DNA from: Selaginella moellendorffii
Taxonomy: Eukaryota > Plantae > Lycopodiophyta
NCBI RefSeq assembly: GCF_000143415.4
Contig: NW_003314360.1
Coordinates: 363,572-425,386, forward strand
DNA: 61,815 bases
Direction of reading: 5' to 3'
Every line of letters begins with the position of its first letter. The first letter of the stretch is position 1. Below, in pieces: positions 1 to 61,815 of the stretch. The position numbers and the translations under genes are program-made. Below the pieces are notes generated by a model that had not been told where the DNA came from, made no database searches, and saw nothing but the letters and a program-made list of their open reading frames with translations.

Positions 1-430
1 TTCAAGACACACCCAGTTTGTACTTTCGCCGCCAATTCCGCGGCCCACTCCACCACCCACACGCAGCCCACTTGGCGTCCCGGGAGATTTCAGCACCACT
101 CTCCAACTGTAAGTGGCAGAGTAGCCTTGCTGCTACGATCCGCTGCACACACAGTGCACATTCGCCAGCGAGTCCGGCCTCGATTGTCACGGCCTCCATT
201 CGGCTTCAAATGGTAAGTCTCTTAGACGAAGTAGAAAATGGCATGAGGCCACATGCCATTCAGTAGCAACATTGGCATGCACCGATTGGGCTCTCGAGTG
301 CAGTCCGGTTACAGATGGCGTGTAGCCTCACGCCATCTTAGGATGCAGCCTCAAGACATCTGATGCAGTGGTGAATGGCGTGTGGCCTCACGTTATTTCC
401 AGCTGCTAGCTTTTCATCTGTCAGCTCTAA

Positions 431-3010: not shown

Positions 3011-3128
3011 GTTTAAATGTTATCTCACAAGCTCTGTATGCAGGAGCGTGGCCACCCCCAGATGCTGAAACGGCGTTAACAGCTACTGATGTTAGGCCGA
3101 GGTCACAACCTGCACAAGGTAAGGTCAC

Positions 3129-19600: not shown

Positions 19601-20118
19601 ATTGCTGGACCCTTCATTAGTCCCTCTTGTGCTAGTGGAGTTAACTGGGCATTTCAAGTGTACTTAGACTGGACGAGCATAAGGACGGAATTCCTACGTG
19701 TTATTAGCTAAACATACTTAGCCTAGTAAGGAGTTCCCGTCTTGTTATGTCTTGCACTGGCTAATAACAAGAACCCTCATGTATTGAGATTAATCCCTCA
19801 ATATCGCTGGATGATAGCTTACCGTGTCTGCTAAACACCCTCGCTATCATGTCCTTTGTGTTAGTCTCATTTCGATCCTAAATGCTAATTATGGAAAGTG
19901 TCTAGATTTGCTCATTTGGCATATCTACGGAATGTAGAGATTGTCCTAAACAATGGTGTTTGTCTCGTATCCAAATTCACAATCTAGTGCCATTCCATAT
20001 TTAGTAAGTTTCAAGCTTATCCTAGAGACTAACTCCTGATACTAAGGGAGGCTTGGGGTGAAAGCCCAAAGCATGTGTTCCTCAAGAGGGGGGGGGGGCG
20101 ACTATGGGGGGTTCCAAA

Positions 20119-20669
20119 TGTATAGTAGGGATAGTGGGTAGGTTGGGCATGATTGACCAACCTGAGGTATAGTCTAACTCCCGCTTGTATGTTTGTCCTT
20201 GTTTTGCATCCAGCTTGAGTCTAAGCCCAAGTTCCATTCCATGTTAGCTGGTGGAGTACCCATGTCCTTACATTAGGCCACCAGTATGCCGAAATAGCAC
20301 CAGATTCCATTTGGCTTCGTTTTGCATGCTAGTCCTAGCATTGGGATGTTGGTTGCTCTAGGATTGTACCAAGTCGCTCCGGGCTCCTGTCCTTTCGCTC
20401 CTTGGGCTATATGCTTGGGAGTTGCTCTGTGGTTCGGTTCCGTTGCTCCTACGTTCCATGCTTGGGAGTTTGGCACCATTCCTTCGTTCAGTGACCTAAG
20501 GCCCTGAACCTTGGGTTCCGTACCACTATCATTTAGACACATGGCATATGACACATGGCATGTGTCACATGGCATAAAGAGGGTTTAGGTTCCACTTTGT
20601 GGTGTTATCCTATAGTAAATTACCATAGGATAAAGGGTCAAAACCATGTGCACTACATTTGGTATCAAA
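20119..20669 (+). mobile_element. LTR flanked by a PPT-like G run and a tRNA-Met PBS; same family as 40087-40545 (inverted)
   Basis: Ends ...CACTACA followed by TTTGGTATCAAAG; GAGGGGGGGGG upstream; long reverse-complement similarity to 40087-40545. Left boundary approximate. Confidence 0.55.
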
Positions 20670-21477
20670 GGATGAGTCACATCATCATATATCACATATC
20701 ACATATCATATAACTTGATGGTACATGAAATCATCTCTCCCCCCACCCCCAACCCCTTGGTCCATATACTTTTTATTAAGTGGAACAATCTAATAAATTT
20801 TTGCCACTTATATGACAATCATTACTTATAAAAGACAAAAGGAGTTTATTTAAGTTGGCAAAATCTAAATTAATGAAATGGCATTTTTAATAGGGAGTAC
20901 TAAAGGGAACTTTAAATCTTAATTAAGGAGATTATTATAGAAGTTAAAATACTTATTTCTTTTACATAATTTCTTAAAGAATAACAATTTTATTAAAGAA
21001 AAATAAGTCCCAAAAAGATTTTTCCACAATAGAAACAATTCTAAAGATTATGTTACATACATTTTCTCTATCTATGCAAATTGCATTAACACTTGTCATT
21101 GACAAGAAAATGATTAACAAAGTTAGCCACCCTTACTGCTCTAAGAATCATTTAGGTTACAAAAGATTATATACCCCTACTTATGTATGAGAACTTAAAT
21201 TAACAAACCAAACTTGCTAGTAAGGTTTAAAATAAACTATTATAAATAATCAATTAAAATTTATCATAAATGTGACTATGGATATCTATCTATAAATCCT
21301 TTTAAATATTCTTCTATTATTGCCATAATCACTGTTGGTCCCAACCACATTCAGCCAAGATCCCAACCACTGCCAAACATGGTCAAACAGCTTCGTTCGG
21401 TGATTCCATTCAGTGATTCCAATGACAATTGTGCTTGTGGGGGCTAGAATTCCGATGCTATTGCAGCAATCACGGTC

Positions 21478-36773: not shown

Positions 36774-38861
36774 TTACCATCCTGGATAATGCATCAGCCA
36801 CCTTATTATCACCTCCATGCTTGTACCAGATCTTAACAGACATTTCCTGCAGGAACTCTTGCCAACGAGCAAGACGGCCTCGAAGATCCTTTTGTCGACG
36901 AGAGATTGATGGTCTGAATCCACATGGAAGTCCGATCCATATAGATAATGTCGCCATTCCTTCACAGCAGCAATCACAGCATATAACTCCTTGTCTCGAG
37001 TAGGCCAATTCCGCTGTGTGGCATCAAACTTATGGCTCATGTATGCAAGAGGATGCCCAACTTGAAGCAAAACAGCTCCAATAGCAATGTCACTTGCATC
37101 TGTCTCGACCACAAGAGGCTTTTCAGGATCAAAAATCTTCAACACCGGAGCAGAGATACAACATTGCTTCAAACGTTGAAATGCCACTTCACACTTCTCA
37201 TCCCAACCATGAATAGTAGCATGTTTCGACGTATTCTGAAGAAGATTAGTTAAAGGGGCTGCTATCCCTGAAAAGTCCTTCACAAATCGTCGAAAAACTC
37301 CAGCCATACCAAGGAAACTACGGAGATCATGCACTGTGGAAGGTATAGGCCAATCAACCACGGCCTGAATCTTTGCGGGATCAGCTCTCACTCCATGTAC
37401 CGAAATCAAATGCTCGAGATATCCAATCTCCTCTAAAAAAAACTCACACTTGGATAACTTCGAGTAGAGCTTGTTGTCCCTCAAAAGTTGTAAAACACTT
37501 TGCACATGCATCTCATGTTCCTCCATGGAAGAGCTGAATACCAGGATATCATCAAAATAATCAATTGCAAACTTTCCCAAGTAAGGTTGTAGAACTTGAT
37601 TCATCAATCTCTGAAAAGTTGCAGGAGCATTTGTCAAACCAAACGGCATCACTAAAAACTCGTAGTGACCTGTCCTTGTCCGAAATGCAGTTTTCGGAAC
37701 ATCCTCTGGCTTGACACAAATCTGATGATATCCTTGCCTCAAATCAATCTTCGAAAAATATCGAGCTCCACGAAGATGATCGAGTAAATCATCGATACGA
37801 GGGATCGGGAACATATTCTTCACTATCCTATCATTCAATCCCTTGTAGTTCACACAAAGACGCCATGTACCATCTTTCTTTTTGACCATCACCACTGGAG
37901 CAGCCCAAGGAGATTTGCTGATCCGTAACCACCCTTTCCGAAGGTATTTAGCAAGCTGCCTATTAATCTCCTCATCTTCAGTGGGACTAGTACGAGTTGG
38001 TTGTCGCTGAAAAGGAGCGGCTCTAGGAACCAAGTCAATCTCATGCTGAATTCCACGTTCTGGAGGCAAACCATCAGGTAACTCATCCGGAAATACGTCA
38101 TGGAACTCCTCCTGAATGGAATCCACTTGTGCCTCATGCCCACGAACGTACTCCAAATCAGTCATGATCAAATTAGAAAGAAACGGGTACACCACAAAAG
38201 ATCTAGCTATCTCATGCGAGCATGTTACCAACTCCAAAGCGTTAATCAATGGAGTATCACTATTGTCTGTCCCGACAATCTCTTTTATAGTGCCACCAAC
38301 TTCGATATGCAGAACATTACGCTGCCAATCGATTCTTGGCTTCCTGTCATAAAACCATTCCTTCCCAAGAATAACGTCTGTGCGACCAAGATCCATAACT
38401 TGGAACGAAGGATGGTCGAGAATCCTTTGAACCGTCAAAGGAACACTCAGAGCCCATTCACCGTAAACACGAGTGCTATGTCCATCTGCCATAACCACCT
38501 CGTAGATTACTGAACTCTTTTCCACAGGCAAACCAAGTTTCTTCACCACCTTAGAGCTCAAAAAATTATGTGTAGCACCTGGATCGAAAAGAATACTAAC
38601 AGCATGTCCTTGAATGTCCCCCTTGGCCTTCACAAGTTGATTGCGCATAGAACCATTAATCTCTACAGAGTTGATACGAACTCGAGACTTAGATTCTTGA
38701 ACTTTTGCCACAAGGTGTGGAAGAGCCACCACAGCAGATGCCTGAGCTGTATCCATGATGGATTCCACCACATTCACCTTAGCATTCTTTGATCCCTTCA
38801 CAAGAGGACAATCCTTGCCATGATGTCCAGCCTTATGACAACGAAAACAATTGCCCTCCAC
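36774..38861 (-). CDS. pol: Ty3/gypsy pol (zinc knuckle, protease, RT, RNase H)
   Basis: CFRCHKAGHHGKDC, DPGATH, KIDLRQGYHQI, MPFGLTNAPATFQ, YFDD, TDAS. Confidence 0.9.
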   Translation of the reverse strand: MEGNCFRCHKAGHHGKDCPLVKGSKNAKVNVVESIMDTAQASAVVALPHLVAKVQESKSRVRINSVEINGSMRNQLVKAKGDIQGHAVSILFDPGATHNFLSSKVVKKLGLPVEKSSVIYEVVMADGHSTRVYGEWALSVPLTVQRILDHPSFQVMDLGRTDVILGKEWFYDRKPRIDWQRNVLHIEVGGTIKEIVGTDNSDTPLINALELVTCSHEIARSFVVYPFLSNLIMTDLEYVRGHEAQVDSIQEEFHDVFPDELPDGLPPERGIQHEIDLVPRAAPFQRQPTRTSPTEDEEINRQLAKYLRKGWLRISKSPWAAPVVMVKKKDGTWRLCVNYKGLNDRIVKNMFPIPRIDDLLDHLRGARYFSKIDLRQGYHQICVKPEDVPKTAFRTRTGHYEFLVMPFGLTNAPATFQRLMNQVLQPYLGKFAIDYFDDILVFSSSMEEHEMHVQSVLQLLRDNKLYSKLSKCEFFLEEIGYLEHLISVHGVRADPAKIQAVVDWPIPSTVHDLRSFLGMAGVFRRFVKDFSGIAAPLTNLLQNTSKHATIHGWDEKCEVAFQRLKQCCISAPVLKIFDPEKPLVVETDASDIAIGAVLLQVGHPLAYMSHKFDATQRNWPTRDKELYAVIAAVKEWRHYLYGSDFHVDSDHQSLVDKRIFEAVLLVGKSSCRKCLLRSGTSMEVIIRWLMHYPGW

Positions 38862-38876
38862 CTTGTCCTTCTCTTG

Positions 38877-39824
38877 TTAGTCTAACCGATGTCTTTTTGC
38901 CTCATTGCCATCTCCACTCTTCGAGCTATGACGAAGCAACGGCCGTTTCTTCCCTGAGAATGAAGTATTGGTGGGTTGGTCATCACGTTGACCACCCCGG
39001 AGACCATCCTTTTGACCAACGTTGACCGAGTTGACCGACGGTTTGGGCGAAAAGATTTGAGCCTTAGTGATAGCATCAGTCAATGTTGCTGGAAAATCCT
39101 TCTTGACCTTCTGCTGCACATCCACCGAGCTCAATCCTTTGATAAAACATTGCACCTTTAGCAGCTCATTATAGGTGCCTGTGAGACTAAGGCAAAGATC
39201 ACGGAACTTGCGGGCATACGCATTCAAAGACAAAGTCCCCTGCCGGATCTCTAACAACTGATTCACGAGATCAACCTCTTCAAACTTCTTGACAAACGAA
39301 GCGCGGAAAACCTTTGTCAAATCAGTCCAAGAAGTCGACATTGGATTAGCTTTGATGTAGTTCTTCCACCACGAAGAAGCATGGCCCGTAAGCTTCGTCA
39401 CAAAAAAATCTATCTTCACCTTATCCTCACAAGAATTGTGAGACCAACAACTTTCCCACAATTCCAACCAAGAATCAACCTCTTGACTATCACAAACATC
39501 CAGTGATGATTTCCATTCCACGATACCATAATCCTTGGCATGCTTGACGTACCAATGGTAATCACGGACATGAGATTGATTCAACCCTTGAGGGTTCATG
39601 CGAAGCAAGAAATCCTTGATGAGATTGACGGAATCCTTAACCTCCTTTATGTCGCTCTGAACTGCAGAAATCTGGCGTCCTTGCCGCAGAATGACATCAT
39701 CAAGAGTCTCTTCGGCATCGTCATGGCTATCCTCACTAATGCCATACTCCTCATCAGGATCAATATCTTGCTCACCCGCCATCCCCAAAAGAACGTGCTG
39801 CTCCGATACCAATGAAACGAACAA
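38877..39824 (-). CDS. gag: Ty3/gypsy gag
   Basis: Retrotrans_gag motifs (LTGHASSWW, IRQGTLSLNAYARKF, FIKGL); in frame with pol. Confidence 0.85.
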   Translation of the reverse strand: MFVSLVSEQHVLLGMAGEQDIDPDEEYGISEDSHDDAEETLDDVILRQGRQISAVQSDIKEVKDSVNLIKDFLLRMNPQGLNQSHVRDYHWYVKHAKDYGIVEWKSSLDVCDSQEVDSWLELWESCWSHNSCEDKVKIDFFVTKLTGHASSWWKNYIKANPMSTSWTDLTKVFRASFVKKFEEVDLVNQLLEIRQGTLSLNAYARKFRDLCLSLTGTYNELLKVQCFIKGLSSVDVQQKVKKDFPATLTDAITKAQIFSPKPSVNSVNVGQKDGLRGGQRDDQPTNTSFSGKKRPLLRHSSKSGDGNEAKRHRLD

Positions 39825-46353: not shown

Positions 46354-49095
46354 TTATGAATGCTCTTGCTGCATCTCTTGCATGGTCTGGCAGGTGATGG
46401 TGGCACTCTGCTTCCGCATCCAACCATGCACAACATTATCCACCGATATGCTCATGCTGGGATCCCTTGGATTCAGCACCCATCTCTTTTCTAGGCAATC
46501 CTTCGTATATCCGGAACTTGGCTTGAACCACTCCACAGTTACATTGAAGGAGTTAGTTTCCGCGTCCTCCTCTGCATCAGTGATGCAGCGCCCCACCCAT
46601 ATCATTTGTTTTTTATTACTGGGTCTGACAAGCACGACCATTCCTTTGCAGACCTGTACTGGATTGAATGCTGAATCCGGCTTCTTGTTCCTCGGCCCAC
46701 AATAGTGATCCTCAACATCATTATCTGTCACTGCATTTCCAGAGGACATTGTTCCACTACTATCTGGTGCTCTGGGTTCTGGCCAAAAGGACTCTTCCAA
46801 TTCTTCATATACAACCGGCCCATTTTGGATAGCAGATATAATCTTCTCCCAGTATTCGAGCAAAGGCTTGCACCTCTGAAAATAGGATTCTCCACCAAAC
46901 ACCAACCCCCTCTTCCAGAAGGCAATATGCTGTCTAATCCCGGCCACTATACTTTCCTGGTCTTTGAGTCCATCCGGGTGCATCAGCCGTGGGGAACCCT
47001 GAGGAATTATAGGTTCCCCAGTTATGGGATCTCTCTTGAAGAGTTCAATGCCGTCCACTGGCAGCCACACTGTGTCCCATTCTCTCATCTTGTACCTCAT
47101 CACTGGAGCATCGTCACGCATGCTGAAATGAAACTGAAGAGGCTTGGAGTGGCCAATCAGCGTTTCGGATCCGTCCCTGATGTAGCCTCTTACAAACCCC
47201 TTAAAGTCTGGAACCTCTGTCACAAGTGCAGCTTCAACAATGCCTTTGATGCAATTTTGGAATTCATCGTAGAGTTGTGGGAGGGTGAGGACATTGGATC
47301 GCCGGAGGGACTCTGCCAGGTGACTGAACATGGCATCGACGTCTTCATGAGTGTGCCCAACCATGAGAAAGCCAAGTGTAACCGTTTCAAATATGCCTTT
47401 GGCAACAAGCATCGCCAAGTACGCGAAGACGTACATGTTTTTGTTCTCACTGCCAGCATTGTCTGTTTGGAGCAGAAGATGGGGTGGAAGGCCACATCGG
47501 CCGCAAGAACTTCCTTGAGATTCTGCTTCGTTTGGATGAGGTTGTGCATTCACCGGGCGACCAGCCTCGTCGGAATGGCATGAGGCCTCACGTGATAACC
47601 CTATAATCTGACGGCCAACATATTCACTGGGATGGCATGGGGCCCCACACGATACTGCAAGCCTTTGCTCCTCCTCCAGCTGAACCCTGTATGGGGTTCG
47701 ATCAACAAGGGCCTTATGCAAGGGTTGGCCGTTCAGCTCAGTCTGCGCACTTTGCAGAGACCTTAAGTGTTTTGCTAGGGACGCAATCATCATGTTTGCA
47801 CCCCCGCCACCCCATAGAGGTACAAAGAAGTTCCTATAGTTCTGGGCACCATGCCCATGAGCGATTATGCCAAATAGAGACACAGACAGCTGCATGGATG
47901 AAGAGATTGCCTTGGGGGCAGGATTGAGTCGAGGTAAGCACATCTTTTTCTAGTCCATTTTGTCGTGGATGATGCAGAGGTAAGAGTCAGGTCTCTCCAT
48001 GGAGAGAATCCTGTTATGATAATATGCAGTCCTGCAACTTCTCTGCTCGATGTTGTGGTCGAGCCGCCTTCTAACCAATGTCTCTCGCTCTTGAGCGATG
48101 CAAGAATTCTTCGACAAAGCCATTTTGATAGCAGTGCACTCGTCACACTTTGAAAAGCTGGAGTACTTTCCTATACTCACATCCCTGAACCTGTTGCTCC
48201 ACAATCTACTAAATCTAGATTGGCTCAGCTTCTTGTAGCCATTACTCTGGAGTTCCCGATTCACATCTTCCAATATGGCCCCCTTGGTATACATGGAAGG
48301 GAGAACTCGTTGGGTGTCTCGAGTTCCATCTTCTAAGAGGCGGGTTTTATGTGGTTGCTGTTCGCTACATGTCTCGACAAACCTCTTGAAGATTGCCTCT
48401 CCATATACAACATGACCCCTGGTTTTGTGAGTACTGTCGTTCCCATGGACTGCCTATTGAACCCTTTGTTCCTCGAACTCAGTTTTGATTCTGTAGAATG
48501 TGGTTCGAGGGACTCCATAAATGATTCTCCATGCCTTCATGCAGACCAAACCCCTCTGGAAGACCATGCCCCCCACCTGATGTTCTGAAGCATCAACAGA
48601 TGACCGTAATGCCTTATACACAAAATTGCGAGCTGCCTTCCAGGACAATGTCTTGTATCTTGCTCTCTCCTCTTCAATAGCATCCCAATCAGCATGTTGA
48701 CAGCACCTCCTCTTGCAACAAGCAACTGTCGAGACCATTCAAACCTCCATCGCCATTTTCTGCCTTTTCGGTTCGTTGCTCAGATCCCTTTGGCTGCGCT
48801 TTAGGAAGGTGTACTTTCTTTTCCCATGAAGAGATGTTCTGTCATCAGTTGTAGTGGTGTTTGATTGTGAATCCTTCACATTCTCAAACACTAAGTGCCT
48901 CAATTTCCACCGCACAATGCTTCCAATAGTCAGACTGTTTTCTTCTGTGTCAACAACCTCTAAAATCGCAACTCCAATATCATCCCAGCCCAATTCTTGA
49001 TTAGCAACCGCATCTCTTGGATCGACAACTGTGGCTAAGCCCTCAGCTACCACCTCCCCCTTGGGGTTGTTTAGAAACACCTTTGCCTGATCCAT
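46354..49095 (-). pseudogene. Sola1/DUF7869-like DDD transposase (about 910 codons, three nonsense codons)
   Basis: One frame with stops at 48739 (TGA), 48454 (TAG) and 47950 (TAG). Motifs CCKRRC, VCMKAW..YGV, FSKCDEC, IIHDKMD(Q), LQTDNAGSENKN and FLMVGHTHEDVDAMFS; C-terminal SH3/Tudor-like beta domain. Confidence 0.75.
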
Positions 49096-50331: not shown

Positions 50332-50520
50332 GCCGCTCGCAACACCGCAACTATTCGTAGCGCCGCTCGCAACACCGCAACTGCTCGTAGCGCCGCTCGC
50401 AACACCGCAACTGCTCGTAGCGCCGCTCGCACAAATTGCCACTCGTATAAACTGCCGCTCGCATAAACTGCTGCTCGCAATGGCACTCGCAATGCCGCAA
50501 CCGCTCGTAGACGCATAAAC
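50332..50520. repeat. 30-bp CpG-rich tandem repeat
   Basis: GCCGCTCGCAACACCGCAACTGCTCGTAGC x3 plus degenerate copies. Confidence 0.85.
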
Positions 50521-52151
50521 CACAGCTCACAACGCCGCTTACACAAGCAGCGCTCATTGCGCTCAGCGGAACCAAGAACACGGCGCACAAAAATGATAGA
50601 CCTAGGAATGAGTTCAAGAATTCAAAAATAACACACGCTTGAACGTCACATCAAATCCTCTGACAAACCAGATCTTATGATTCCTCTGACAAATTTCAAA
50701 CTGAGTAGCTTCTAGACTTTGCTGTCGGAGGTTGAACTTTGTCACATCATGTCCTTGCCTCGATCCAGCTGTGCCATGTCAGTGATTCGAACTTTGCCAT
50801 GCCATGTCAGCGATCCGCGCCAAGATTATTCGCCGTGTAAAGGAATAATTATGCTGTGTGTGTACGTCCATTTATGGCAATATAAGGCCACACGCCATTC
50901 AAAGAATAATGCTAGTCGAGCATTTTTTGGTGCATTTTTGGGTTCAAACTTGCATGAGCCCACACGCTATAAAGTTTACCTGTACCAAAAATAGAAACAG
51001 CTTTATTTACTTGGGAATTTAAGTGGTTGAGGCATTTTTAAACTTACAAACACATGCCCTACTTACGTTCCTTTGGTTGCTTAAAATTCAAAAATATTAT
51101 AAACCTTTCTTTTTGCATTTTCAATGTTTTCAATTATGGTTTTTGATTTTCGCAAGACCAGCCTAGTAATTAGCAATTCAGTAGCTTGATAAACATGCAA
51201 ATACAGAACTTGATGCAAAATCCTTTGATATGTTAGGACCATAAACACATTTCAATAGAGAGGGTCCTTTCATTTCATAACTCCTTACGTAGATCTTGGT
51301 GAAACCAGAGTTAGTGAAGTTGGTTTCAACATTGCTAAACATTGTAAGGCTCGTGTAGTCTCATGTGGTGTCCGATCGAGATGCTTCTTTGCAGGGTCAT
51401 TAAGAAGGACATTGTATACCATTCTTTATTTAGCTGAACATCTGGCATTTTTGGAAATACAAGATGCTTTGGAATATCCAATCATAAATGGTATAAATAT
51501 AGCGAGGGTATTAAATGATATCCCAATCCTGATCTTTCTTTTGGATTTCGCGTGCATGCAGTCCGAGGAATGATGACATTGCGGATTTCTTTTGGATTTC
51601 ACGTGCATGCATGCACGCGGCGATCCAGAAATTAATGGTGGCGCCCAAGTCCGACGAATGATGACGTTGCGGGATTACCAAACGTCGTGACATTTCACGC
51701 GTGTGAGGTTAGGTTTTGCATTTTGCTTCGTACTCGTGCTTGCACACTCGCGCTTGCATCGCGCTCCCACTCGCGATCACGCTCACATTCGCGCTCATCT
51801 ACCTTCTCTACAGGTTTCTCGTGTGCATCGGCGTCCACTTGAGCTTGCATCACACTCGCGCTCGCATCGCGCTCGTGTGCATTGGCGTCCACTTCAAGAC
51901 ACACCCAGTTTGTAACTTCGCCGCCAACTCCGCCGCCCACTCCGCCACCCACACACAGCCCACTTGGCATCCCGGGAGATTTCAGCGCCACTCTCCAACT
52001 GTAAGTGGCAGAGTAGCCTTGCTGCTACGATCCGCTGCACACACAATGCACATTCGCCAGCGAGTCCGGCCTCGATTGTCACGCCTCCATTTGGCTTCAA
52101 ATGGTAAGTCTTTTAGGCCAAGTAGAAAATGGCATGAGGCCACATGCCATT

Positions 52152-52183
52152 CAGCCAAGGGAACGGACTTGGAAGAATCAGCC

Positions 52184-52219
<36 letters not shown>

Positions 52220-52224
52220 ACTTT
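52152..52224 (+). rRNA. 28S (25S/26S) rRNA fragment, 5' half (orphon, non-functional)
   Basis: CAGCCAAGGGAACGGACTTGGAAGAATCAGCCGGGAAAGAAGACCCTGTTGAGCTTGACTCTAGTCCGACTTT matches the conserved eukaryotic LSU core with few substitutions. Confidence 0.92.
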
Positions 52225-53881
52225 GTCAATGGGGGCTTTTCATATTTATCCTCTTGAAAAACCATAGAGGTCTAGTTTCGACATGCTCGAAACTGGCAAA
52301 GAGCATATGGGGGGGTTGAGAAGAGGGGAGGATCCCTAGAACTAGAGTGCGGTTCGGTTCTGTGCAGATCAGATCAAGGAACTAGTGTCCGGTTCTGTGC
52401 TGCCCAAAGCCATGCCACTCACTCCGCAAACGCGTGCTCCCTATCCGTACTGGTGGTGAACTTCGCGCCTTATCCATGGTCCTCAGCCTCATCTCTCCCA
52501 TGTGGTTGCATCTACAGATGTGAAGGACTTGAGTCAATCGTGAGATCAGTGAAGGTACACCGCCCTTGCTTGATCTCCATCTGTATGACGCCTACAGTTT
52601 TCCAGAGATATAAGAAGCCCCTGGAGATGTACTGTCCTGGATCCCACAGTGCGGTGAACTGAGGAGGAGTGTGCCGTCTCCGGTAATGGTGATGCTGCTG
52701 CTGCCTGGGAGTCCTCTCCTCGCTGCTGTGTGACTGATCCCCTCCAACTGGGATTGCTGTTTCCAGCCTCCCATCAGGCCGTGCAAGTGTAGTGCCGCCA
52801 CGCCAGTCCCACGGCCTCATACCAGTGTAGCCGTACCCTTGGCACTATCCATCTGGAATCACAACCAAAGGCGAGCCGCTCCTTTCGGATCCGGGTTGAA
52901 GCTACGTTTCCGTACTCCAACAAGCTAGCCTGATGCAGCTTCTGACACGAGCCGTGCCCCTCGAAACATCCCATACATCAAATGGCGTTGCTCCGAGTGC
53001 CTTGATCATGGTGGATCCACAACCAAGGCAAGAAAGGGATCAGCCAACACAGCTGTACCGTACAAATTGGGACTTCAGTGTGCCGTCGAAAGTTGTTCCT
53101 TTGCCGATTGGGACTAGGTGTACAATCGGAGGGTAGGGAAGTGCTGCCACGTAGTTTGAAGGACCCGGTGCGTGTCGGAGAATAGTGTCCTTTGCATATT
53201 CAAACGAGCAGCCGTAACGGCGCCAAGCGAGTTGTCCCCTCCTTAGGTGGAGCTTGGCTCTCCGGACCCCAAAACTCCGAACCCCAAGTGAATGAGGAAG
53301 GAAGGACGCTGCCGATGAGGTTCTGTGCAGCTAGTGTCCTTGGAAGAAGTTCCAGCAACCGTGGACTCCAAAGCCCCCAACTTGAACCATGTTCCGAAAT
53401 TTGAACGTTTGGATCTTGCTCGTGAACCGTTGGATTGCCACGAAGTTTTGCTGGCGTGTGCTCCTTCGGAGGATCTATCTTCCCACCGTTGCGATCAGTG
53501 AAAAGGTACGTGGTTCAGCCGCCGCCGCAATCCCCAGGTCGTCCATAACCCTAGCCGCCACCAGAGATAGGGTCGCCTTGATCTCCTGATTCCTGGCTCC
53601 AAATCGCCTGTTCTTGGACTCAGAATGATCGTGGGGATGTGCTCTCTCCAGCCGTGAAAAAGAATCGTGGGAAATCCATGTGGAGAGCTCGCAGTGACTA
53701 AAAGAGTACTCTTGACGCTTTCTCGCTCATGGAACATGCAAATCCAGTGAAACCAAGGCACGGCTTGCTCTCAGCATCGTCCTTATTGCTCTCCTAGTCC
53801 TACTCCTACTCTGGATCAAGCACGAAAGTCGACTCTCAAGGCACTCCTCTTCTCGCTAAACTTAGGGTTTTTTTTCTCTCT
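52225..53881 (-). mobile_element. Unit A: non-autonomous retroelement family 1 (apparently full length, about 1.66 kb)
   Basis: Bounded by CTAGTCCGACTTT; its 3' end resembles the LINE 3' end incl. the GTTTCG-ACATGCT-CGAAAC stem-loop; no RT ORF; telo-box at the 5' end. Confidence 0.75.
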
Positions 53882-53910
53882 CTAGTCCGACTTTTCACTA
53901 GTCCGACTTT

Positions 53911-55994
53911 TTTTGTTAAACGGGGCTTTTATTCACCAGAAAACCAAAACTGGGCTGAGTTTCGTTAAGGCACGAAACCAGCAAAGAGCCGCGACAGAAA
54001 GTTTCGTCGTGCACGAAACCAACAAAGAGCAATAGGGGGGGTCTTCACGTGGAGGTACTTTGTAGAAAAACTCGCCGCAGACTTTTATCTCAAGCCATGG
54101 TCTTGAGTAGAGCCAGCAGAAAGATGATGGGAGAAGCTCCAAGTACCAAGGAACCAGCCTTTACGACTTGAGAGTAGAGTTACTGAAGAACTTGTCTCTC
54201 TTGATCCCTTAAGGAGAGACTCCAGGTGCCAAGGGGTCAGTGCTGAGAGGGGAGTTGCTCACAAGCTTGACGGCTCATGCTGTCGCGATTGTGGAATCCA
54301 GAACCCTGTCCAGTGGCGTCCACAATCACTCGTGAGTACTTGCCTCTCTTGATCCCCTCAGAGGGCATGCCTTACATCGTCTTTGTGCCTCGTCGAGTCT
54401 CTGAACTGAAGTGTATCTGACCATAAGTATTTCTTGAAACCTTGGAGGTACCCCATGGACGTACACTGCTCTCCCTTGGTTTCTTCTTGTGCACTTTCAT
54501 ATCTGCCCCCCGCTGTAAGCTGCTGATGATCGGACCCTACTGAGACTCAGTACCAATCTTGTCGCTCGTCGGTGTCGAGTGCTCTTGTTGGTGCCTTTGC
54601 TCTGGTCCATGTCTTTATCTTGAGTGTCTTCATAGCTAGGGCCAAAGAACTCATTCATTGTGACCACACTAAACACCCTCAATTGTCGTAGAGAAGCTGG
54701 ATGTTTGCCCAAGTGTTGGTGACGAAATCCTCCTCACGTGGGGAGCCTTGTTTCCAAACCTCCACCATTGTCGACCTTGAAGAAACCCACAAAGAGAACC
54801 ACCTCCTTGATAAGTCATCAAGATCGACAAACTTGAAGCAAGGTCGCGTACGACACCATCACTTCAAGCTCCCAATCCTTGGCAAGAATCACCTTACAAG
54901 TCTTGGGGATGAAGAGGATCTCCTTCACCTTGCTTGAGCTCACCACTGTCCATGGAGCAGGCCTCCAGACCCCCAGAAAGAAAACCGTGGAGTAACGAAG
55001 GACAAGTCTAAGCAGCAAGCCGAGGACTCAAATACTTAGATCTCCTTCCTCCACCGTTTGATCTTCCTGAAAATCTGAAGGCCGACTCTCCATATTCAGC
55101 TCCAACTTCTCACCGACGTGATCTCGAAACGAGTGCATTAGCCAGGAGAACCAGCCGCTCGAACTTACACTGGACTTCACTTGTTTGAACCATGAAACTT
55201 GAGCTGACAGATCTTGCAGCCCAGCCGTTAGATCTTCGTGAAACTTTGTAGGCGCAATCTCCCTAGCGTCTTCTAGCTTCTCACCAGAGCGATTTTTGGT
55301 CCGATGTCGCCTAAAGCAGCCACAGCTGACCCATTCTCGCCTCAAACCTTAGCCGCCCAAGTGCCTAGGGTCACTTGTATCTTCCCAGATCTTTATCCAA
55401 ACGGCCTGCATCTAGTGACAGAGTGTCTTTGCCTTGTAGAACCCCAGCCGTGGAGAAGAAAAGAGAAGCCCAGCCGGTGATGAGTGCCAGACGCTCAAAC
55501 TTCCACTGGCCCACACTTGCTTGAACCGTGAACTTCGAGCAGACGGATCTCGCAACCCAGCCGTTAGATCTTCTTGAAATCTTGTAGTTGCAGTCTCCCT
55601 GGTGTCTTCTAGCTTCTCACCAGAGCGATCTCAGATCAGATGGCGCATATAGCAGTCGCAGCCGACCCTTGCTCACCCCGAACCCTAGCCGCCGACATGA
55701 CTAGGGCCACTTCGATCTTCTCGGATTTCAATCCAAACGGCCTGCAGATAGCGACAGAGTGTTGCCTTGCATTGTAGGAGCCCAGCCGTGGATAGAACAG
55801 AGAAGACCAGCCAGTGATGAGAGCAAAACAAAAGATTTTTCGATGAAGTGCCCAATATTGCTTGTGCCTTCGATTCTTGAGGGGGCGCCTTGATTCAGCA
55901 GCTCACAGGACTTCTACACTACCTCCTCTACACTAGATCTGGCCACGGAAGTCGACTCTCAATGCGCCATCTCCTCCTCTCCGTCTAGGGTTTT
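53911..55994 (-). mobile_element. Unit B: non-autonomous retroelement family 2 (about 2.08 kb)
   Basis: Bounded by the same TSD; two GTTTCG-N7/8-CGAAAC..CAAAGAGC stem-loops at the 3' end; 5' motif AAGTCGACTCTCAA...TAGGGTTTT shared with unit A. Confidence 0.7.
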
Positions 55995-56030
55995 CTAGTC
56001 CGACTTTTCTAGTCCCACTAGTCCGACTTT

Positions 56031-56518
56031 TTGTCAATGGGGTTTTATTTAGTTTAGCCTCTATAAACCATAGAGTCCGATTTCGACATGCTCGAAACCG
56101 GGAAAGAGCTCTTCAAGATTTTTAGGGGGGGTGGGACGAGGGGGACGAAGTAGAACTGGTACTCGAGCCCGTGATGTCTGAGCTCCAAGCTTTCGAAGTT
56201 CCTGATGTGGAACTCTGTCGACTCGGGGAGGTACACGTGCTTTCGTTCCTGAACATGTGCTGCCAAATCCATATTGGTGGCTTCCACGTCCATTCTTCTT
56301 CTCCAGCCTCGCTTCTTCCTCTAAAAAACAGCCACAGCTTCTTCTCCTTCGCTATCTTCCCTTCCTCGCCTCGTTTGATCAGCGTGTCCAGGCGGGCCGC
56401 GAGTGAGACGATCAGTCTGGACCAAACCTTTGAGATAGTTGCTCGAGCCGAGGGGTCCGTGTCCTCGAACAGCCTGGCGCAGCGAGCCTTCCATATCTCT
56501 GCTAGTGTGCATCCCCGA
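56031..56518 (-). mobile_element. Unit C: 5'-truncated LINE 3' end (488 bp)
   Basis: Near-identical to 57543-58029; bounded by the TSD. Confidence 0.9.
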
Positions 56519-56531
56519 CTAGTCCGACTTT

Positions 56532-57529
56532 TTGTCAATGGGGGCTTTTCATATTTATCCTCTTGAAAAACCATAGAGGTCCAGTTTCGACATGCTCGAA
56601 ACTGGCAAAGAGCATATGGGGGGGTTGAGAAGAGGGGAGGATCCCTAGAACTAGAGTGCAGTTCGGTTCTGTGCAGATCAGATCAAGGAACTAGTGTCCG
56701 GTTCTGTGCTGCCCAAAGCCATGCCACTCACTCCGCAAACGCGTGCTCCCTATCCGTACTGGTGGTGAACTTCGCGCCTTATCCATGGTCCCCAGCCTCA
56801 TCTCTCCCATGTGGTTGCATCTACAAATGTGAAGGACTTGAGTCGATCGTGAGATCAGTGAAGGTACACCGCCCTTGCTTGATCTCCATCTGTATGACGC
56901 CTACAGTTTTCCAGAGATATAAGAAGCCCCTGGAGATGTACTGTCCTAGATCCCACAGTGCGGTGAACTGAGGAGGAGTGTGCCGTCTCCGGTAATGGTG
57001 ATGCTGCTGCTGCCTGGGAGTCCTCTCCTCACTGCTGTGTGACTGATCCCCTCCAACTGGGATTGCTGTTTCCAGCCTCCCATCAGGCCGTGCAAGTGTA
57101 GTGCCGCCACGCCAGTCCCACGGCCTCATACCAGTGTAGCCGTACCCTTGGTGCTATCCATCTGGAATCACAACCAAAGGCGAGCCGCTCCTTTCGGATC
57201 CGGGTTGAAGCTACGTTTCCGTACTCCAACAAGCTAGCCTGATGCAGCTTCTGACACGAGCCGTGCCCCTCGAAACATCCCATACATCAAATGGCGTTGC
57301 TCCGAGTGCCTTGATCATGGTGGATCCACAACCAAGGCAAGAAAGGGATCAGCCAACACAGCTGTACCGTACAAATTGGGACTTCAGTGTGCCGTCGAAA
57401 GTTGTTCCTTTGCCGATTGGGACTAGGTGTACAATCGGAGGGTAGGGAAGTGCTGCCACGTAGTTTGAAGGACCCGGTGCGTGTCGGAGAATAGTGTCCT
57501 TTGCATATTCAAACGAGCAGCCGTAACGA
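56532..57529 (-). mobile_element. Unit D: 5'-truncated copy of family 1 (about 1 kb)
   Basis: Near-identical to 52225-53219; bounded by the TSD. Confidence 0.9.
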
Positions 57530-57542
57530 CTAGTCCGACTTT

Positions 57543-59956
57543 TTGTCAATGGGGTTTTATTTAGTTTAGCCTCTATAAACCATAGAGTCCGATTTCGACA
57601 TGCTCGAAACCGGGAAAGAGCTCTTCAAGATTTTTAGGGGGGGTGGGACGAGGGGGACGAAGTAGAACTGGTACTCGAGCCCGTGATGTCTGAGCTCCAA
57701 GCTTTCGAAGTTCCTGATGTGGAACTCTGTCGACTCGGGGAGGTACACGTGCTTTCGTTCCTGAACATGTGCTGCCAAATCCATATTGGTGGCTTCCACG
57801 TCCATTCTTCTTCTCCAGCCTCGCTTCTTCCTCTAAAAAACGGCCACAGCTTCTTCTCCTTCGCTATCTTCCCTTCCTCGCCTCGTTTGATCAGCGTGTC
57901 CAGGCGGGCCGCGAGTGAGACGATCAGTCTGGACCAAACCTTTGAGATAGTTGCTCGAGCCGAGGGGTCCGTGTCCTCGAACAGCCTGGCGCAGCGAGCC
58001 TTCCATATCTCTGCTAGTGTGCATCCCCGAAGCGCATCAAAGAGCTCCTGGTGGAGGTGCGTAATGTGTGTCCGAGTTTGGTTGAGTTGATCAAAGTGTG
58101 GGGCCTCATTGTGTCTCCACTTCCATGCATCAGGATTCTTTGTTTTTCCTTGGATGAAGCTACCCCAGAGTGCTGATTCGTATGTGATTGCAGCTCCTCC
58201 GGTTGACGTTTGTTTGAGCACCGCTGCTGCACCTTCCCATACTTCCTGTGCTGCCGGACATTCCCATAAGATGTGTCGCTGTGTTTCTGTGGCGCCACAG
58301 GTCTTGCAGGCTGTGTTCGGAAGATGTATGGCAACCAGGGAGGGAAGACGTTCTTGTTGGGCCAGCCACATGAAGTAGCGGTTCTTAGCTGACCAGCGCC
58401 CTTTCCAGATCTTGTTGATGCAGTGTGAGTGGTTCCTGGAACGGATCTGTTGGGCCTTTGCTTTCCGGATGAGGGAGGATCGAGTTGGCACCCTGATCAG
58501 CTTGCGGCCCAGCTTGGTCTCGTACTGGAAGAAGTCCTTGCACGTGGTTCCCCTCCAATGCCACTCTGCAGGATCCCACTTGAGTTCGTCCAGGGTTTGT
58601 TGGCGGAACCAGTAGAGGCGGGCATATTGGTTTTTTGGGATCAGTGGATCAACGTTGGCAGTTTTTTTCTCCATTTGAATCACTCTGATCGGTTTGGCCC
58701 TGCTCATGTCGGGGAGGTCCTCGTACTCGGGGGTAACGATGGGGTACAAGCGTCCAGCCTGTCCTGCCTTGAAGACTAGTCCCGATGCCATGTTGGGGAG
58801 GGTGCATACGATCGATTCGTCCAGCTTCCACCAACGATGGTGTTGATCCTCTTGCAGGTTTAGTCGTTCAAGGCATGCGTGTTTGGCTGCTAAAAAGGCT
58901 GTCTGGAATTTACGCATCCTGTGTTCTGAGATGGTTAATCCGTAGAAAGTACTGATGCGGTCGCGATTGTGGGCCGTCTGGTTGGGCTGGATCATGGTGT
59001 CTGCCTCTGCGAAGGTTCTCATCCCTGCTCGGTGCAGGTCTCTACATGTCTGGTCCAGGCCGCGATCCTCTGAAGCTCCGAGCGTTTTACCGTTGACCGC
59101 GAAGAGTTTGCTTAGGAAAATTGGCTGCCGGTCCAGTTGTTCTTTGGTACGAGGTGGTTTACGTTCCAGCTTGCACTTGAATTGCCTCCAGAGCTTGAAC
59201 AGCTTTCCTGAGAACGTGTGAGCCTTTGTCATTTTGAGTTTGGTGTCTGAGAAGAGCCATTGTTCGTCTGGCGCCCAGTTTTGTCTGGTGTGCTCGTTCC
59301 TGTCCGGGAGGACTTTCAAAAATTGTGCTCGCAGCAGTATTCTCCATGGTTGGTGGCCAGGCATGAGCATCCTTGTGAAAATTTTGAAGAGAAGAGCCTT
59401 GCATTGTTCTTCGATGTCAATAATATTGAGGCCACCTTCGTGCTTTGGAAGTGTTACTGACCGCCAGTTGACCTTTGCTCCACCACGCGACACGCAGGAG
59501 GAGCCTTTCCAGACATAGGTTCGAATGAGTTGGTTCATTTCCTGGATCGTTCGCCTGTCCATGTTCCAGCATGCTGCCAGGAACCAGATCGCTCCAAGTA
59601 GGATGCTGTTAGCCACCACGCAGCGTGCTGAGAACGATAGTTTTCTGCTCGCCCAGAACTTGAGTTGATCCCTTAGTTTTGTTACTGCTTTTTGGTTCTG
59701 GGGTTCTGGATCATACTGGCGTCCCACTTGGAATCCAAGGTAGCGGGTGGTCTCTTCCGTGTCCAGCCATTTGAAGCCCAGCTCCGTGCCCCATGTTGGA
59801 GGTCTGCCGGGGGGGAGCCATAGTCCTACCGATTTGTGCCAGTTTGTTTTCGATCCCATGGCCTCATTGAAAAAGTCCAGGTCCCTTTTGACGCTTGAGA
59901 GGTTCTCCGGTGATCCCTCCACGATCAGGCTTGTGTCGTCTGCAAAGGCTGAGGAA
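57543..59956 (-). mobile_element. Unit E: 5'-truncated L1/Tx1-type LINE, ORF2 C-terminal part (RT from FADD, zf-RVT)
   Basis: AFADDT, NWHKS, RYLGF, LSFSARCVVANS, KVNWRSVTLPKHEGGLNI, CKTCGATETQRHILWEC and IWKARC..LF; frame open to 57634. Confidence 0.92.
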
Positions 59957-60029
59957 CTAGTCCGACTTTTTGAAATGACTTGAGAGGTGTAGAATAAGTG
60001 GGAGCTTCGGCGCAAGTGAAATACCACTA
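59957..60029 (+). rRNA. 28S rRNA fragment, 3' half
   Basis: CTAGTCCGACTTTTTGAAATGACTTGAGAGGTGTAGAATAAGTGGGAGCTTCGGCGCAAGTGAAATACCACTA directly continues the 52152-52224 LSU sequence. Confidence 0.92.
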
Positions 60030-61815
60030 ATGGTAAGTCTTTTAGGCCAAGTAGAAAATGGCATGAGGCCACATGCCATTCAGTAGCAACATTGGCATGC
60101 ACCGATTGGGCTCTCGAGTGCAGTCCAGTTACAGATGGCGTGTCTGTCACTTGGATCCAGCAACTGTCAATGTGGATGCAGAGAAGGGGGAGGAGCTCAC
60201 CAGTTGGACTATCGGGATGGAAGGCGAGGATCTGAGGCTGTACAACACAGATGGTGGGAGAAAAGAATGCATGGGGATCCTCATCCAAGTGACAGACACT
60301 CCATGCAGTTCCATGCAAGAATATGGACTGGCACTTGTGGTAGAGACAGCGTTCGCCTTCAAGATCCACCTTGCACATCCTAGCGGCTTCCCGGAGGGGG
60401 GCAGCGGCTATGAGGAATTCCTAGAGGGAGCTAGGGAGAGGTTGTCTAGGAAGCCCACAATTTCAAAGACGCTGCGGGTCTATGAAGATCACATGGAATC
60501 CACGGACCTCACCTACGGCGATGTTCAAAAACTATATTCCAACATTGAGCCGTTGAGAGTGCCTCCAGTTCGCGAAACGAAGGGGAAGGGGGTCGATCTG
60601 GAAACTACCCCGAAGCAGAAAAGGGTGGTCAAGCTCAAGCCGACGTCCGACTCTCCTACTCCAAAAAAGAAGCTACTCGGTGATGCCATTGCCTCGGGTT
60701 CGAACATTACACCCACCAAAAAGAAGAGCCGCAAAGAGCAGAAAGAGCAAGAAGAGGCAGCAAAAATCGTCGCAGATAATAGTACTTGTTACTATTCCAA
60801 CAAAGTATATACAATCGACGTGAGCCGTATCGACATCTAAAGCAAATACAACCACAGGCTAGTATCTGATGAGTGGGTGGAGAAATTGAAGCAGAAGATG
60901 CTGGCAAGTCCAGTAACACCCAACATCGCAGACGTGATCCCCTACTACCGAACAATGAAGGGCGAGACGAGGTTTCCAGACTTGATCAATAGGAAGGTGT
61001 TGGACGATCAGAAAATCCGGTTCTATGCCGTCTCCGGGCAACATTCTAGCTTGGCGATGCAAGAGATAGTTGTGGATATTATGGTGGGCGAGGAGGTGAA
61101 GAAAGTCTTCAAGACAAGAGTTGTCCGCCTGATAAAAGGCAACTCGCCCCTCCGATCTATCATATACATCTCCCACGCGCAGAATGTCAAGCAAGAAACA
61201 TGCTACAAATCGGGTCTGCACGAGACATTGGCACGAACACGGAAGCTCTGGGTTCAACTGAAGAAGCCACAAAAACTAGGACAAGGACGTGCACTAGCAA
61301 CTAGCGCCTGGCAGGTAAGCCTCGTTGCATGTGGCATAGCATGTGGCCTCACGCCATTTCCATTGCAGGAATTCTCGAGTCTTCTCTCGAAAACACTGGG
61401 GGTCAATGACACACTCAGCATCCATAACATTCTACTCGCGACAAAAGTTGTTTTTGACAAATGGGTAGATGTGTTAAGGAGGTACCATGACGGGGAGTTG
61501 TTAAACTCAATGGGTGTGGAGGACGGCTGGAAGCCCAATGATTTGAAGCTCAACACCTTGCGTTTCTCGCGGTCTCTAGACGACGACGGCCTTCTGACAG
61601 TGGCTAATGCTCTTCTACGTGGTGAGGTAGTCTTCAACAAGACCAAAATGACTCCCGGCCATATTGTGACATACGAGGACTTGTGCATGACTCTGAGAGC
61701 TCGTGCGCTATTGAAGGATTGGATCTTCGAGCAAGTGGGCGTGGAGAGGGTGAGCATCGACACCACGCAAGAGATGATGGAAGAGCTTGGATTTGTCAAA
61801 CTGAAGACATCGACG

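What the first reader, a model, noticed from the sequence alone, without database searches (positions are those of the whole stretch)
52152..60029. 28S-rDNA-specific L1/Tx1-type LINE building a serial insertion array at one 13-bp site
Seen: a contiguous LSU rRNA fragment is split at CTAGTCCGACTTT, which recurs at 52212, 53882, 53898, 55995, 56018, 56519, 57530 and 59957. These repeats separate five co-oriented elements, all antisense to the rRNA. Each 3' end joins through the target T run, as expected for L1-type target-primed reverse transcription with a ~13-bp TSD. Known: R1/R2/R4 target nearby but upstream LSU sites in animals, and some Tx1 families are sequence-specific. Inference: a plant rDNA-specific APE-type LINE that regenerates its target with each insertion, giving a repeat-spacer-like chronological record. 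I do not recognise this target site from described elements.
Basis: partly seen in the sequence, partly recalled or inferred. Interest (0 to 1): 0.88.

Follow-up and report, generated by a model that had tools for sequence, protein, structure and literature searches.

The report
Spikemoss LINEs stacking at 28S site
In the spikemoss Selaginella, two old lineages of LINE retrotransposons and two non-coding passengers insert again and again at one 13-base spot of the 28S rRNA sequence, here inside a stray 130-base rRNA scrap; animal R1 elements behave this way, but I found no description of it for a plant LINE.

Summary
Eight exact 13-mers separate five antisense elements inside a split LSU rRNA piece.

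One correction: that piece is a 130-bp orphan, not an rDNA unit. It is flanked by a 55-bp duplication inside another repeat, and empty copies of that repeat exist.

The host is Selaginella moellendorffii. Unit E is a 5'-truncated APE-RT LINE of the L1/Tx1 group. A second LINE lineage (F; ORF2 57%, ORF1 24% identical) uses the same site. A and B are non-coding and share only an 80-nt stem-loop tail with E and F.

In independent loci, 12 of 17 family 3' junctions sit on the same 13-mer, three of them directly on Rfam-confirmed LSU rRNA. Five older copies are off target; one has a 13-14-bp TSD at a target-like site. A locus-specific T5 allele at the internal junctions supports serial insertion in place.

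Insertion order cannot be read, and arrays may also grow by duplication, so the 'chronological record' is unproven. The behaviour matches Drosophila R1 tandem arrays, but the clade, site (+161 from R2), orientation and kingdom differ. The only plant precedent found is the endonuclease-less Selaginella PLE-X. Repbase was not checkable.

The parts
52100..52154 (+). Left copy of a 55-bp duplication of host-repeat DNA that bounds the whole cassette
   Evidence: 100% identical to 60029-60083; single copy at the empty sites window 209-263 and L022; both copies share 3 differences from the window's empty copy
52152..52211 (+). LSU (28S/25S) rRNA fragment, left half; the first 3 nt (CAG) overlap the duplication
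   Evidence: 93-97% identical to Rfam-confirmed LSU in L002, L003, L005
52212..52224 (+). Target 13-mer / TSD copy 1 (T3), positions +149 to +161 from the R2 site
52225..53881 (-). Element A: apparently full-length 1.66-kb non-coding, non-autonomous element with an E-type 3' tail
   Evidence: longest stop-free frame 110 aa; only the last 80 nt match E; other copies in L004 and L006
53882..53914 (+). Two 13-mers with a 3-nt spacer (abortive insertion, inferred); T4 and T7 runs
53915..55994 (-). Element B: 2.08-kb non-coding, non-autonomous element with an F-type 3' tail, a doubled tail stem-loop and an internal 337-bp tandem duplication
   Evidence: another copy sits directly on LSU rRNA in L002
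55995..56032 (+). Two 13-mers with a 10-nt spacer containing a partial target copy (abortive insertion, inferred); T4 and T5 runs
56033..56518 (-). Element D: the 3' 486 bp of LINE family E, 5'-truncated
   Evidence: 99.8% identical to the 3' end of E
56519..56533 (+). Target 13-mer / TSD with T5
56534..57529 (-). Element A': the 3' 995 bp of family A, 5'-truncated, with one non-templated base
   Evidence: 9 substitutions against A
57530..57544 (+). Target 13-mer / TSD with T5
57545..59956 (-). Element E: the 3' 2.4 kb of an autonomous-type LINE, truncated at the FADD motif of the RT. The 773-aa ORF2 remnant (59955-57634) has zf-RVT; the 3' UTR is 89 nt
   Evidence: Pfam zf-RVT; 99% identical to 7-kb copies in L004 with ORF1, APE and RT
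57591..57611 (-). 3'-tail stem-loop shared by E, F, A and B (putative RT recognition signal)
   Evidence: 8 pairs, 95% of cells paired, 4 pairs with two-sided changes; slid controls 20-58%
59957..59969 (+). Target 13-mer / TSD copy 8, followed by a locus-specific G-to-T change that makes a T5 run
   Evidence: uninserted eukaryotic LSU reads TTT then GT in all 11 metagenome loci (that pattern also allowed TT)
59970..60029 (+). LSU rRNA fragment, right half
   Evidence: continues the left half in the alignment to L015
60029..60083 (+). Right copy of the 55-bp duplication

Best explanation
A Selaginella lineage of APE-endonuclease LINEs (families E and F, L1/Tx1 group) has acquired a strong but leaky sequence preference for one site in 28S rRNA DNA. 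Inferred mechanism: the endonuclease nicks the rRNA-sense strand after the T run (CTTT^GTG). The freed TTT end pairs with the terminal AAA of the element RNA and primes reverse transcription, so insertions are antisense. The opposite strand is cut 13 bp upstream, which duplicates the 13-mer. The element tails begin with GTC or GTT on the rRNA strand, so each insertion leaves a site that matches the native target over 15 bp and can be used again, building head-to-tail arrays. The non-coding elements A and B carry copies of the E and F tail stem-loop and are mobilised in trans to the same site. Here the substrate was a 130-bp orphan LSU scrap, which took five insertions and two abortive events in a short burst. 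So at most 60 bp upstream and 60 bp downstream of the 13-mer are enough, and an rDNA locus is not needed. Shown: anatomy, domains, TSDs, recurrence at other loci, shared tail. Inferred: nick positions, trans-mobilisation, endonuclease as the source of specificity, abortive events.
For: Same 13-mer at 12 of 17 family 3' junctions in nine other loci found through gene models, not through flanks. Three junctions abut Rfam LSU rRNA at the same base (L002, L003, L005). Relatives have ORF1, an APE with its catalytic residues intact, RT and zf-RVT; the best fold match is L1 endonuclease. 5' truncation points differ between loci, often with 1-2 non-templated bases. Three families are interleaved and no junction pair repeats in the window. 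The T run is 5-7 at all four internal element junctions here, matching this locus's own T5 allele, against exactly 3 at all 12 on-target junctions elsewhere (Fisher p=5.5e-4). The off-target copy in L010 has a 13-14-bp TSD, and its empty site shares CACAAAG and TAG with the target. The tail stem-loop shows compensatory changes.
Against: Five of 17 outside junctions (3 of about 7 independent loci) are off target. No copy was seen in an intact rDNA unit, and no fetched locus retains the downstream rRNA half. Two E copies in L004 share one 5' junction and are identical over the 486 bp compared, which points to duplication or assembly error there. The endonuclease hairpin loop is no longer than that of a grape L1 (15 residues), so no structural basis for the specificity was found. 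There is no biochemical test.
Confidence: 0.85

Rival explanations
1. Self-targeting rather than rDNA targeting: an ordinary T-run-cutting LINE landed once in 28S DNA, and its descendants insert next to their own copies or carry the 13-mer in their RNA, so the 13-mer travels with the element.
For: L001 and L004 arrays show no rRNA in the DNA fetched. Doubled 13-mers occur next to apparently full-length 5' ends (window A and B, L001 F).
Against: Three families (A here, B in L002, F in L003 and L005) each abut genuine upstream LSU sequence at the same base. E and F are deeply split. Off-target copies lack the 13-mer, so it is not part of the element.
Confidence: 0.05
2. The array was assembled in rDNA, or grew by unequal recombination, and was later copied as a block into this site. 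The 55-bp duplication marks that capture.
For: The scrap is centred on the target (60 bp each side). The 55-bp duplication is unlike the family's 13-bp TSD. L004 shows probable unit duplication.
Against: No repeated junction pair in the window. The LSU scrap carries about 3 private changes in 130 bp against about 0.4% in the elements (P=0.016 if captured together; this rests on degenerate LSU copies as reference). Capture of a founder with one element inside remains possible.
Confidence: 0.12
3. Assembly artefact: collapsed or chimeric repeats joined at the shared 13-mer.
For: The window has gaps elsewhere (1850 N). A and A', and D and E, are near-identical. No reads were available.
Against: No N in the array. 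Both flanks rejoin one host repeat with a clean duplication. A and A' differ at 9 sites. Junctions carry unique non-templated bases. Similar but different arrays occur on other scaffolds.
Confidence: 0.03

Closest known systems
R1 elements of Drosophila (R1 clade), tandem arrays (PMC2718515)
   Same: APE-type LINE aimed at 28S DNA. TSD of about 14 bp. Tandem arrays whose copies are separated by the TSD and form by re-insertion into it. Off-target copies at sites with 4-9 bp identity near the first nick. Multiple insertions into a short ectopic 28S piece (22 bp in the D. ananassae spacer).
   Different: Different site (first nick inferred at +161 from the R2 site; R1 is at about +74, from memory). 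Antisense to the rRNA (R1 is sense, from memory). L1/Tx1-group protein among seed-free-plant LINEs, not R1 clade. Plant host. Two autonomous lineages and two non-coding partners share one array.
Sequence-specific Tx1-clade LINEs (Tx1L, Keno, Mutsu, Dewa)
   Same: APE plus RT with L1-like architecture and sequence-specific insertion into multicopy RNA genes (PMC4640811). The element 3' end resembles the target.
   Different: Keno is reported only from animals and targets U2; from memory, Mutsu targets 5S and Dewa tRNA arrays, and none this 28S site. In my trees E and F do not group with the fish LINEs recovered, but no named Tx1 reference was available.
Selaginella PLE-X Penelope-like elements (PMC8557442)
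   Same: Same genus, targeted insertion at a precise 28S position; described in 2021 as the first plant example.
   Different: PLE-X is a Penelope-like RT with no endonuclease, whereas E and F are two-ORF APE LINEs. The PLE-X site is in a supplementary figure that the library does not hold, so whether the sites coincide is untested.
LINEs of seed-free plants (Adiantum and unnamed metagenome relatives, about 1450 aa)
   Same: Nearest proteins, 29-35% identical, with the same APE-RT-zf-RVT layout and no RNase H.
   Different: The three whose contigs were read (L007, L008, L023) show no rRNA flank or 13-mer, so the targeting looks lineage-specific.

Membership tests
L1 group (L1/Tx1) non-LTR retrotransposon | Two ORFs, with ORF2 = N-terminal APE, RT and C-terminal zinc-binding domain | tested here: met
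   Pfam Exo_endo_phos, RVT_1 and zf-RVT in L003 and L004; ORF1 of 680-750 aa, with a CCHC knuckle in F
L1 group (L1/Tx1) non-LTR retrotransposon | RT and endonuclease closest to L1-group proteins | tested here: met
   Best PDB matches are L1 ORF2p (E 2e-42, against 7e-16 for R2) and L1 endonuclease
L1 group (L1/Tx1) non-LTR retrotransposon | TPRT hallmarks: 5' truncation, TSD, priming at a T run | tested here: met
Tx1 clade sensu stricto | RT phylogeny inside the Tx1 clade with named references | tested here: inconclusive
   E and F form a 100/100 pair within a seed-free-plant group, apart from the fish and angiosperm LINEs recovered; midpoint root, no curated references
R1 clade | RT phylogeny inside the R1 clade | tested here: inconclusive
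   No R1 RT was available for the tree; all close relatives are L1-like, and no R1Bm or TRAS1 endonuclease appears among the top PDB matches, which argues against membership
R1 clade | Insertion at the R1 site of 28S | tested here: not met
   Site is +149 to +161 from the R2 site; the region around the R1 site is uninterrupted in L002, L003 and L005
R2 / restriction-like endonuclease elements | Single ORF with a C-terminal restriction-like endonuclease; insertion at the R2 site | tested here: not met
   N-terminal APE and two ORFs; the R2 site is empty in L003 and L005
PLE-X (Selaginella Penelope-like) | PLE-type RT with no endonuclease | tested here: not met
   E and F carry an APE and an L1-type RT
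PLE-X (Selaginella Penelope-like) | Same 28S insertion position | not testable with these tools
   Supplementary figure S5 of PMC8557442 is not held
Target-specific rDNA retrotransposon (functional class) | Most copies at one rRNA-gene position | tested here: met
   12 of 17 outside 3' junctions, and all E copies at least 95% identical to window E; small, non-random sample
Target-specific rDNA retrotransposon (functional class) | Copies resident in intact tandem rDNA units | tested here: inconclusive
   All LSU flanks seen are dispersed or damaged pieces; intact arrays were not among the fetched DNA
tRNA-derived SINE (for A and B) | tRNA, 5S or 7SL-derived head | tested here: not met
   No tRNA or Rfam match in A or B
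Non-autonomous LINE partner (for A and B) | No coding capacity; 3' tail shared with a partner LINE; same insertion signature | tested here: met
Existing Repbase family | Sequence match to a curated Selaginella L1/Tx1 entry with a noted target | not testable with these tools

The most novel reading that the evidence does not exclude
An undescribed plant guild of 28S-targeting retroelements: two anciently split L1-group LINEs and their non-coding partners share one regenerating 13-bp site that needs no more than about 130 bp of context. This would be an origin of rDNA targeting independent of R1 and R2 and the first for a plant LINE. Speculative extension (about 10%): their endonuclease supplies the nick that the endonuclease-less Selaginella PLE-X needs for its unexplained 28S targeting.
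Probability: 0.55. Interest if true: 0.78.

Novelty: new variant of a known kind. Interest (0 to 1): 0.66.

Why it matters
Target-specific LINEs are reported almost entirely from early-branching clades and the Tx1 and R1 clades (PMC4640811), and the only plant 28S-targeting element I found in the literature is a Penelope-like element (PMC8557442). A plant L1-group LINE with a defined site would show an independent origin of rDNA targeting from non-specific relatives, which makes it a natural comparison for how APE domains gain specificity. The orphan scrap sets an upper bound on the DNA context needed. The 80-nt tail shared with unrelated non-coding bodies points to the minimal RNA signal. The site sequence is conserved across eukaryotic LSU genes and family F has an intact ORF2, so it is a candidate plant-native system for site-directed insertion research. 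It also makes the open question of how PLE-X finds 28S directly testable.

Tried and rejected
Rfam found no rRNA in the window at either threshold, because the halves are too short; identity was established through related loci instead.

The 914-aa ORF 57634-60378 is spurious at its N terminus: its first 141 codons read through host repeat and antisense rRNA.

A metagenome scan for non-canonical sequence after the target gave 11 hits, none with a LINE tail at the site. A junction scan of prokaryotic genomes was empty. Three non-Selaginella relatives showed no rRNA flank.

I first read the T-run pattern as proof of rightward growth. Working through both directions showed that each fits, so I withdrew this (notes). 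Polarising A against A' with an older copy gave 3 versus 3 private changes, so there is no age gradient.

A and B are not internal deletions of E or F: they match only at the tail. Endonuclease hairpin length was not diagnostic. ORF1 has no Pfam match and no relatives outside Selaginella in a length-limited search. The bacterial promoter scan was uninformative.

Nine literature searches found no description of this family or site, but the library lacks most subscription papers and Repbase Reports. No human contig was met.
Full report
OBSERVATION. The 13-mer occurs exactly eight times, at the coordinates given, against about one chance match at two mismatches. The rRNA-like halves join into a contiguous LSU piece that aligns end to end with an Rfam-confirmed LSU locus. 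Five elements lie between them on the minus strand: A (52225-53881), B (53915-55994), D (56033-56518), A' (56534-57529) and E (57545-59956). D is the 3' end of E (99.8%) and A' is the 3' end of A (98.9%). Two of the 13-mers are doubled with only 3 and 10 nt between the copies.

The LSU piece is about 130 bp long and there is no rRNA gene in the window. The whole cassette is bounded by a perfect 55-bp direct repeat and interrupts a dispersed repeat. That repeat has empty copies, with a single 55-mer, at window 209-263 and in L022. The array is therefore in an orphan scrap of rRNA sequence. How the scrap arrived is unresolved. Short microhomologies at both ends (3 nt and 1 nt) fit either break repair with filler DNA or a retrotransposition event with a long duplication (inference). 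The scrap carries about three private changes in 130 bp, against about 0.4% in the elements, which mildly favours the scrap being older (the reference LSU copies are themselves degenerate).

WHAT THE ELEMENTS ARE. The closest relatives of the E protein are all Selaginella moellendorffii gene models, and L004 holds E copies 99% identical to the window's. Those copies are at least 7 kb long, with an ORF1 of about 700 aa and an ORF2 with APE, RT and zf-RVT. A second family, F, has an intact 1472-aa ORF2 in L003. It is 57% identical to E over the shared C-terminal half, 50% in the endonuclease and only 24% in the ORF1 core. Catalytic APE residues are present in both. The predicted endonuclease (pLDDT 88) matches L1 endonuclease best. 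In two trees E and F are sisters (100/100) within a group of unnamed metagenome LINEs and, in the second tree, fern LINEs, apart from angiosperm RNase H-bearing L1s and fish LINEs. No curated clade references were available, so L1 versus Tx1 stays open. A and B have no long ORF and match E and F only over the last 80 nt or so, A with E and B with F. They have no tRNA or Rfam head. All tails share an 8-bp stem with compensatory changes between families (relatedness can inflate the shuffle test). A and B resemble each other at their 5' ends.

IS THE SITE TARGETED? I fetched nine further S. moellendorffii loci through gene models, not through their flanks. Twelve of 17 family 3' junctions sit on the 13-mer (L001 three, L002 four, L003 one, L004 three, L005 one). 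In L002, L003 and L005 the terminal element abuts Rfam-confirmed LSU rRNA at the same base. With the window, three families (A, B, F) are each seen directly on upstream rRNA sequence. Mixed arrays recur: F, E', F', E in L001; B, E', E', E in L002; A, E, E, E in L004. Five junctions are off target: two in tandem in L006, one event seen in both L009 and L010, and one in L022. After merging likely duplicates (L003 with L005, L009 with L010) the count is four on-target and three off-target loci. The off-target E and A copies are older (87-93% identical to young copies), while every E copy above 95% is on target; the sample is small. The L010 copy has a 13-14-bp TSD, and its empty site shares CACAAAG and a downstream TAG with the rRNA target. 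The two L006 junctions resemble each other and the target at about 8 of 13 positions. This is the pattern described for off-target R1 copies (PMC2718515). None of the LSU flanks seen belongs to an intact rDNA unit, so residence in functional arrays is not shown.

MECHANISM. Shown: antisense orientation, joining at the T run, 13-bp duplication, variable 5' truncation with non-templated bases. Inferred from standard TPRT: a nick after TTT on the rRNA-sense strand, priming on the terminal AAA of the RNA, and a second nick 13 bp upstream. The tails read GTC or GTT where the rRNA reads GTG, so every junction restores 15 bp of native target. Serial insertion in place is supported by three points. 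The three families are interleaved. No junction pair is repeated. And the T run is five to seven long at all four internal element junctions, matching the T5 allele at this locus's right-hand site, whereas it is exactly three at all 12 on-target junctions elsewhere (p=5.5e-4). The doubled 13-mers are best read as abortive events; L001 has one that contains the first three bases of a tail. An alternative is that full-length RNAs carry a target copy at their 5' end.

THE 'CHRONOLOGICAL RECORD'. The T-run pattern fits growth from either end. A and A' carry equal numbers of private changes (3 and 3), and D and E differ at one base. Within each locus the copies are about equally diverged (window 99.8%, L001 96%, L002 94%), so each array formed in a burst. 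In L004 two E copies share one 5' junction although E extends further upstream in L001, which suggests duplication. The array is a record of insertions, but its order is not readable from these data, and the CRISPR-like analogy is only superficial.

COMPARISON. It works like Drosophila R1, whose tandem arrays are separated by a 14-bp TSD and which also colonises a short ectopic 28S piece (PMC2718515). It fails the R1 and R2 site tests: the 13-mer spans +149 to +161 from the R2 site. Reported target-specific APE elements belong to the Tx1 and R1 clades (PMC4640811). The one plant precedent found is Selaginella PLE-X, an endonuclease-less Penelope-like element called the first plant 28S-targeting element in 2021, with its targeting unexplained (PMC8557442); its site could not be read here. 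Three non-Selaginella relatives show no rRNA flank, and a metagenome scan found no insertion at this site in other eukaryotes.

VERDICT. A real feature. The array-building mechanism is known from R1, so this is a new variant of a known kind, apparently with a new site, lineage and kingdom. The main uncertainty on novelty is whether Repbase already records it. Confidence in the mechanism 0.85; interest 0.66.

Noticed in passing
L005:13246-15075: A separate 1.83-kb insertion interrupts the same LSU copy at a different position, far upstream of the R2 site. No ORF over 150 aa and no match in the other loci. It could be another rDNA-associated element.
   Followed up: partly
window 1-3128 and 50500-61815; L022:1340-5710: The host repeat is a dispersed, 97-98% conserved element with a 693-aa reading frame that has no Pfam match. 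Its class is unidentified.
   Followed up: partly
window 52128-52151 and 60057-60080: The 55-bp duplication ends in a 24-nt near-palindrome next to the left junction; a hairpin may have helped the break that captured the rRNA scrap.
   Followed up: no
L006:22899-25490: A third related LINE (66% nucleotide identity to E, E-type tail) sits in tandem with an old A-like copy at a non-rDNA site, so serial insertion also occurs off target.
   Followed up: partly
L002:15350-16758 and 20656-20774: The LSU piece is fused directly to an SSU rRNA fragment, with a 5S gene about 4 kb away: a rearranged rDNA orphan.
   Followed up: no
window 53866-53881 and 55984-55994: The 5' ends of A and B begin with a purine-rich stretch containing an AAACCCTA telo-box-like motif; from memory such motifs occur in plant promoters. 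Possible internal promoter.
   Followed up: no
L003:5209-7455 and L004:2937-4976: Both ORF1 proteins end in a weakly shared C-terminal region of about 110 aa with no database match. Only F keeps a CCHC knuckle.
   Followed up: partly
window 36774-39824 (-): Ty3/gypsy LTR retrotransposon gag and pol.
   Followed up: no
window 46354-47943 (-): ORF with DUF7869, probably transposon-derived.
   Followed up: no
window 6919-7012 (-): tRNA-Cys prediction.
   Followed up: no
window 19659-20092: Empty copy of the repeat that holds the off-target E insertion of L009 and L010.
   Followed up: yes
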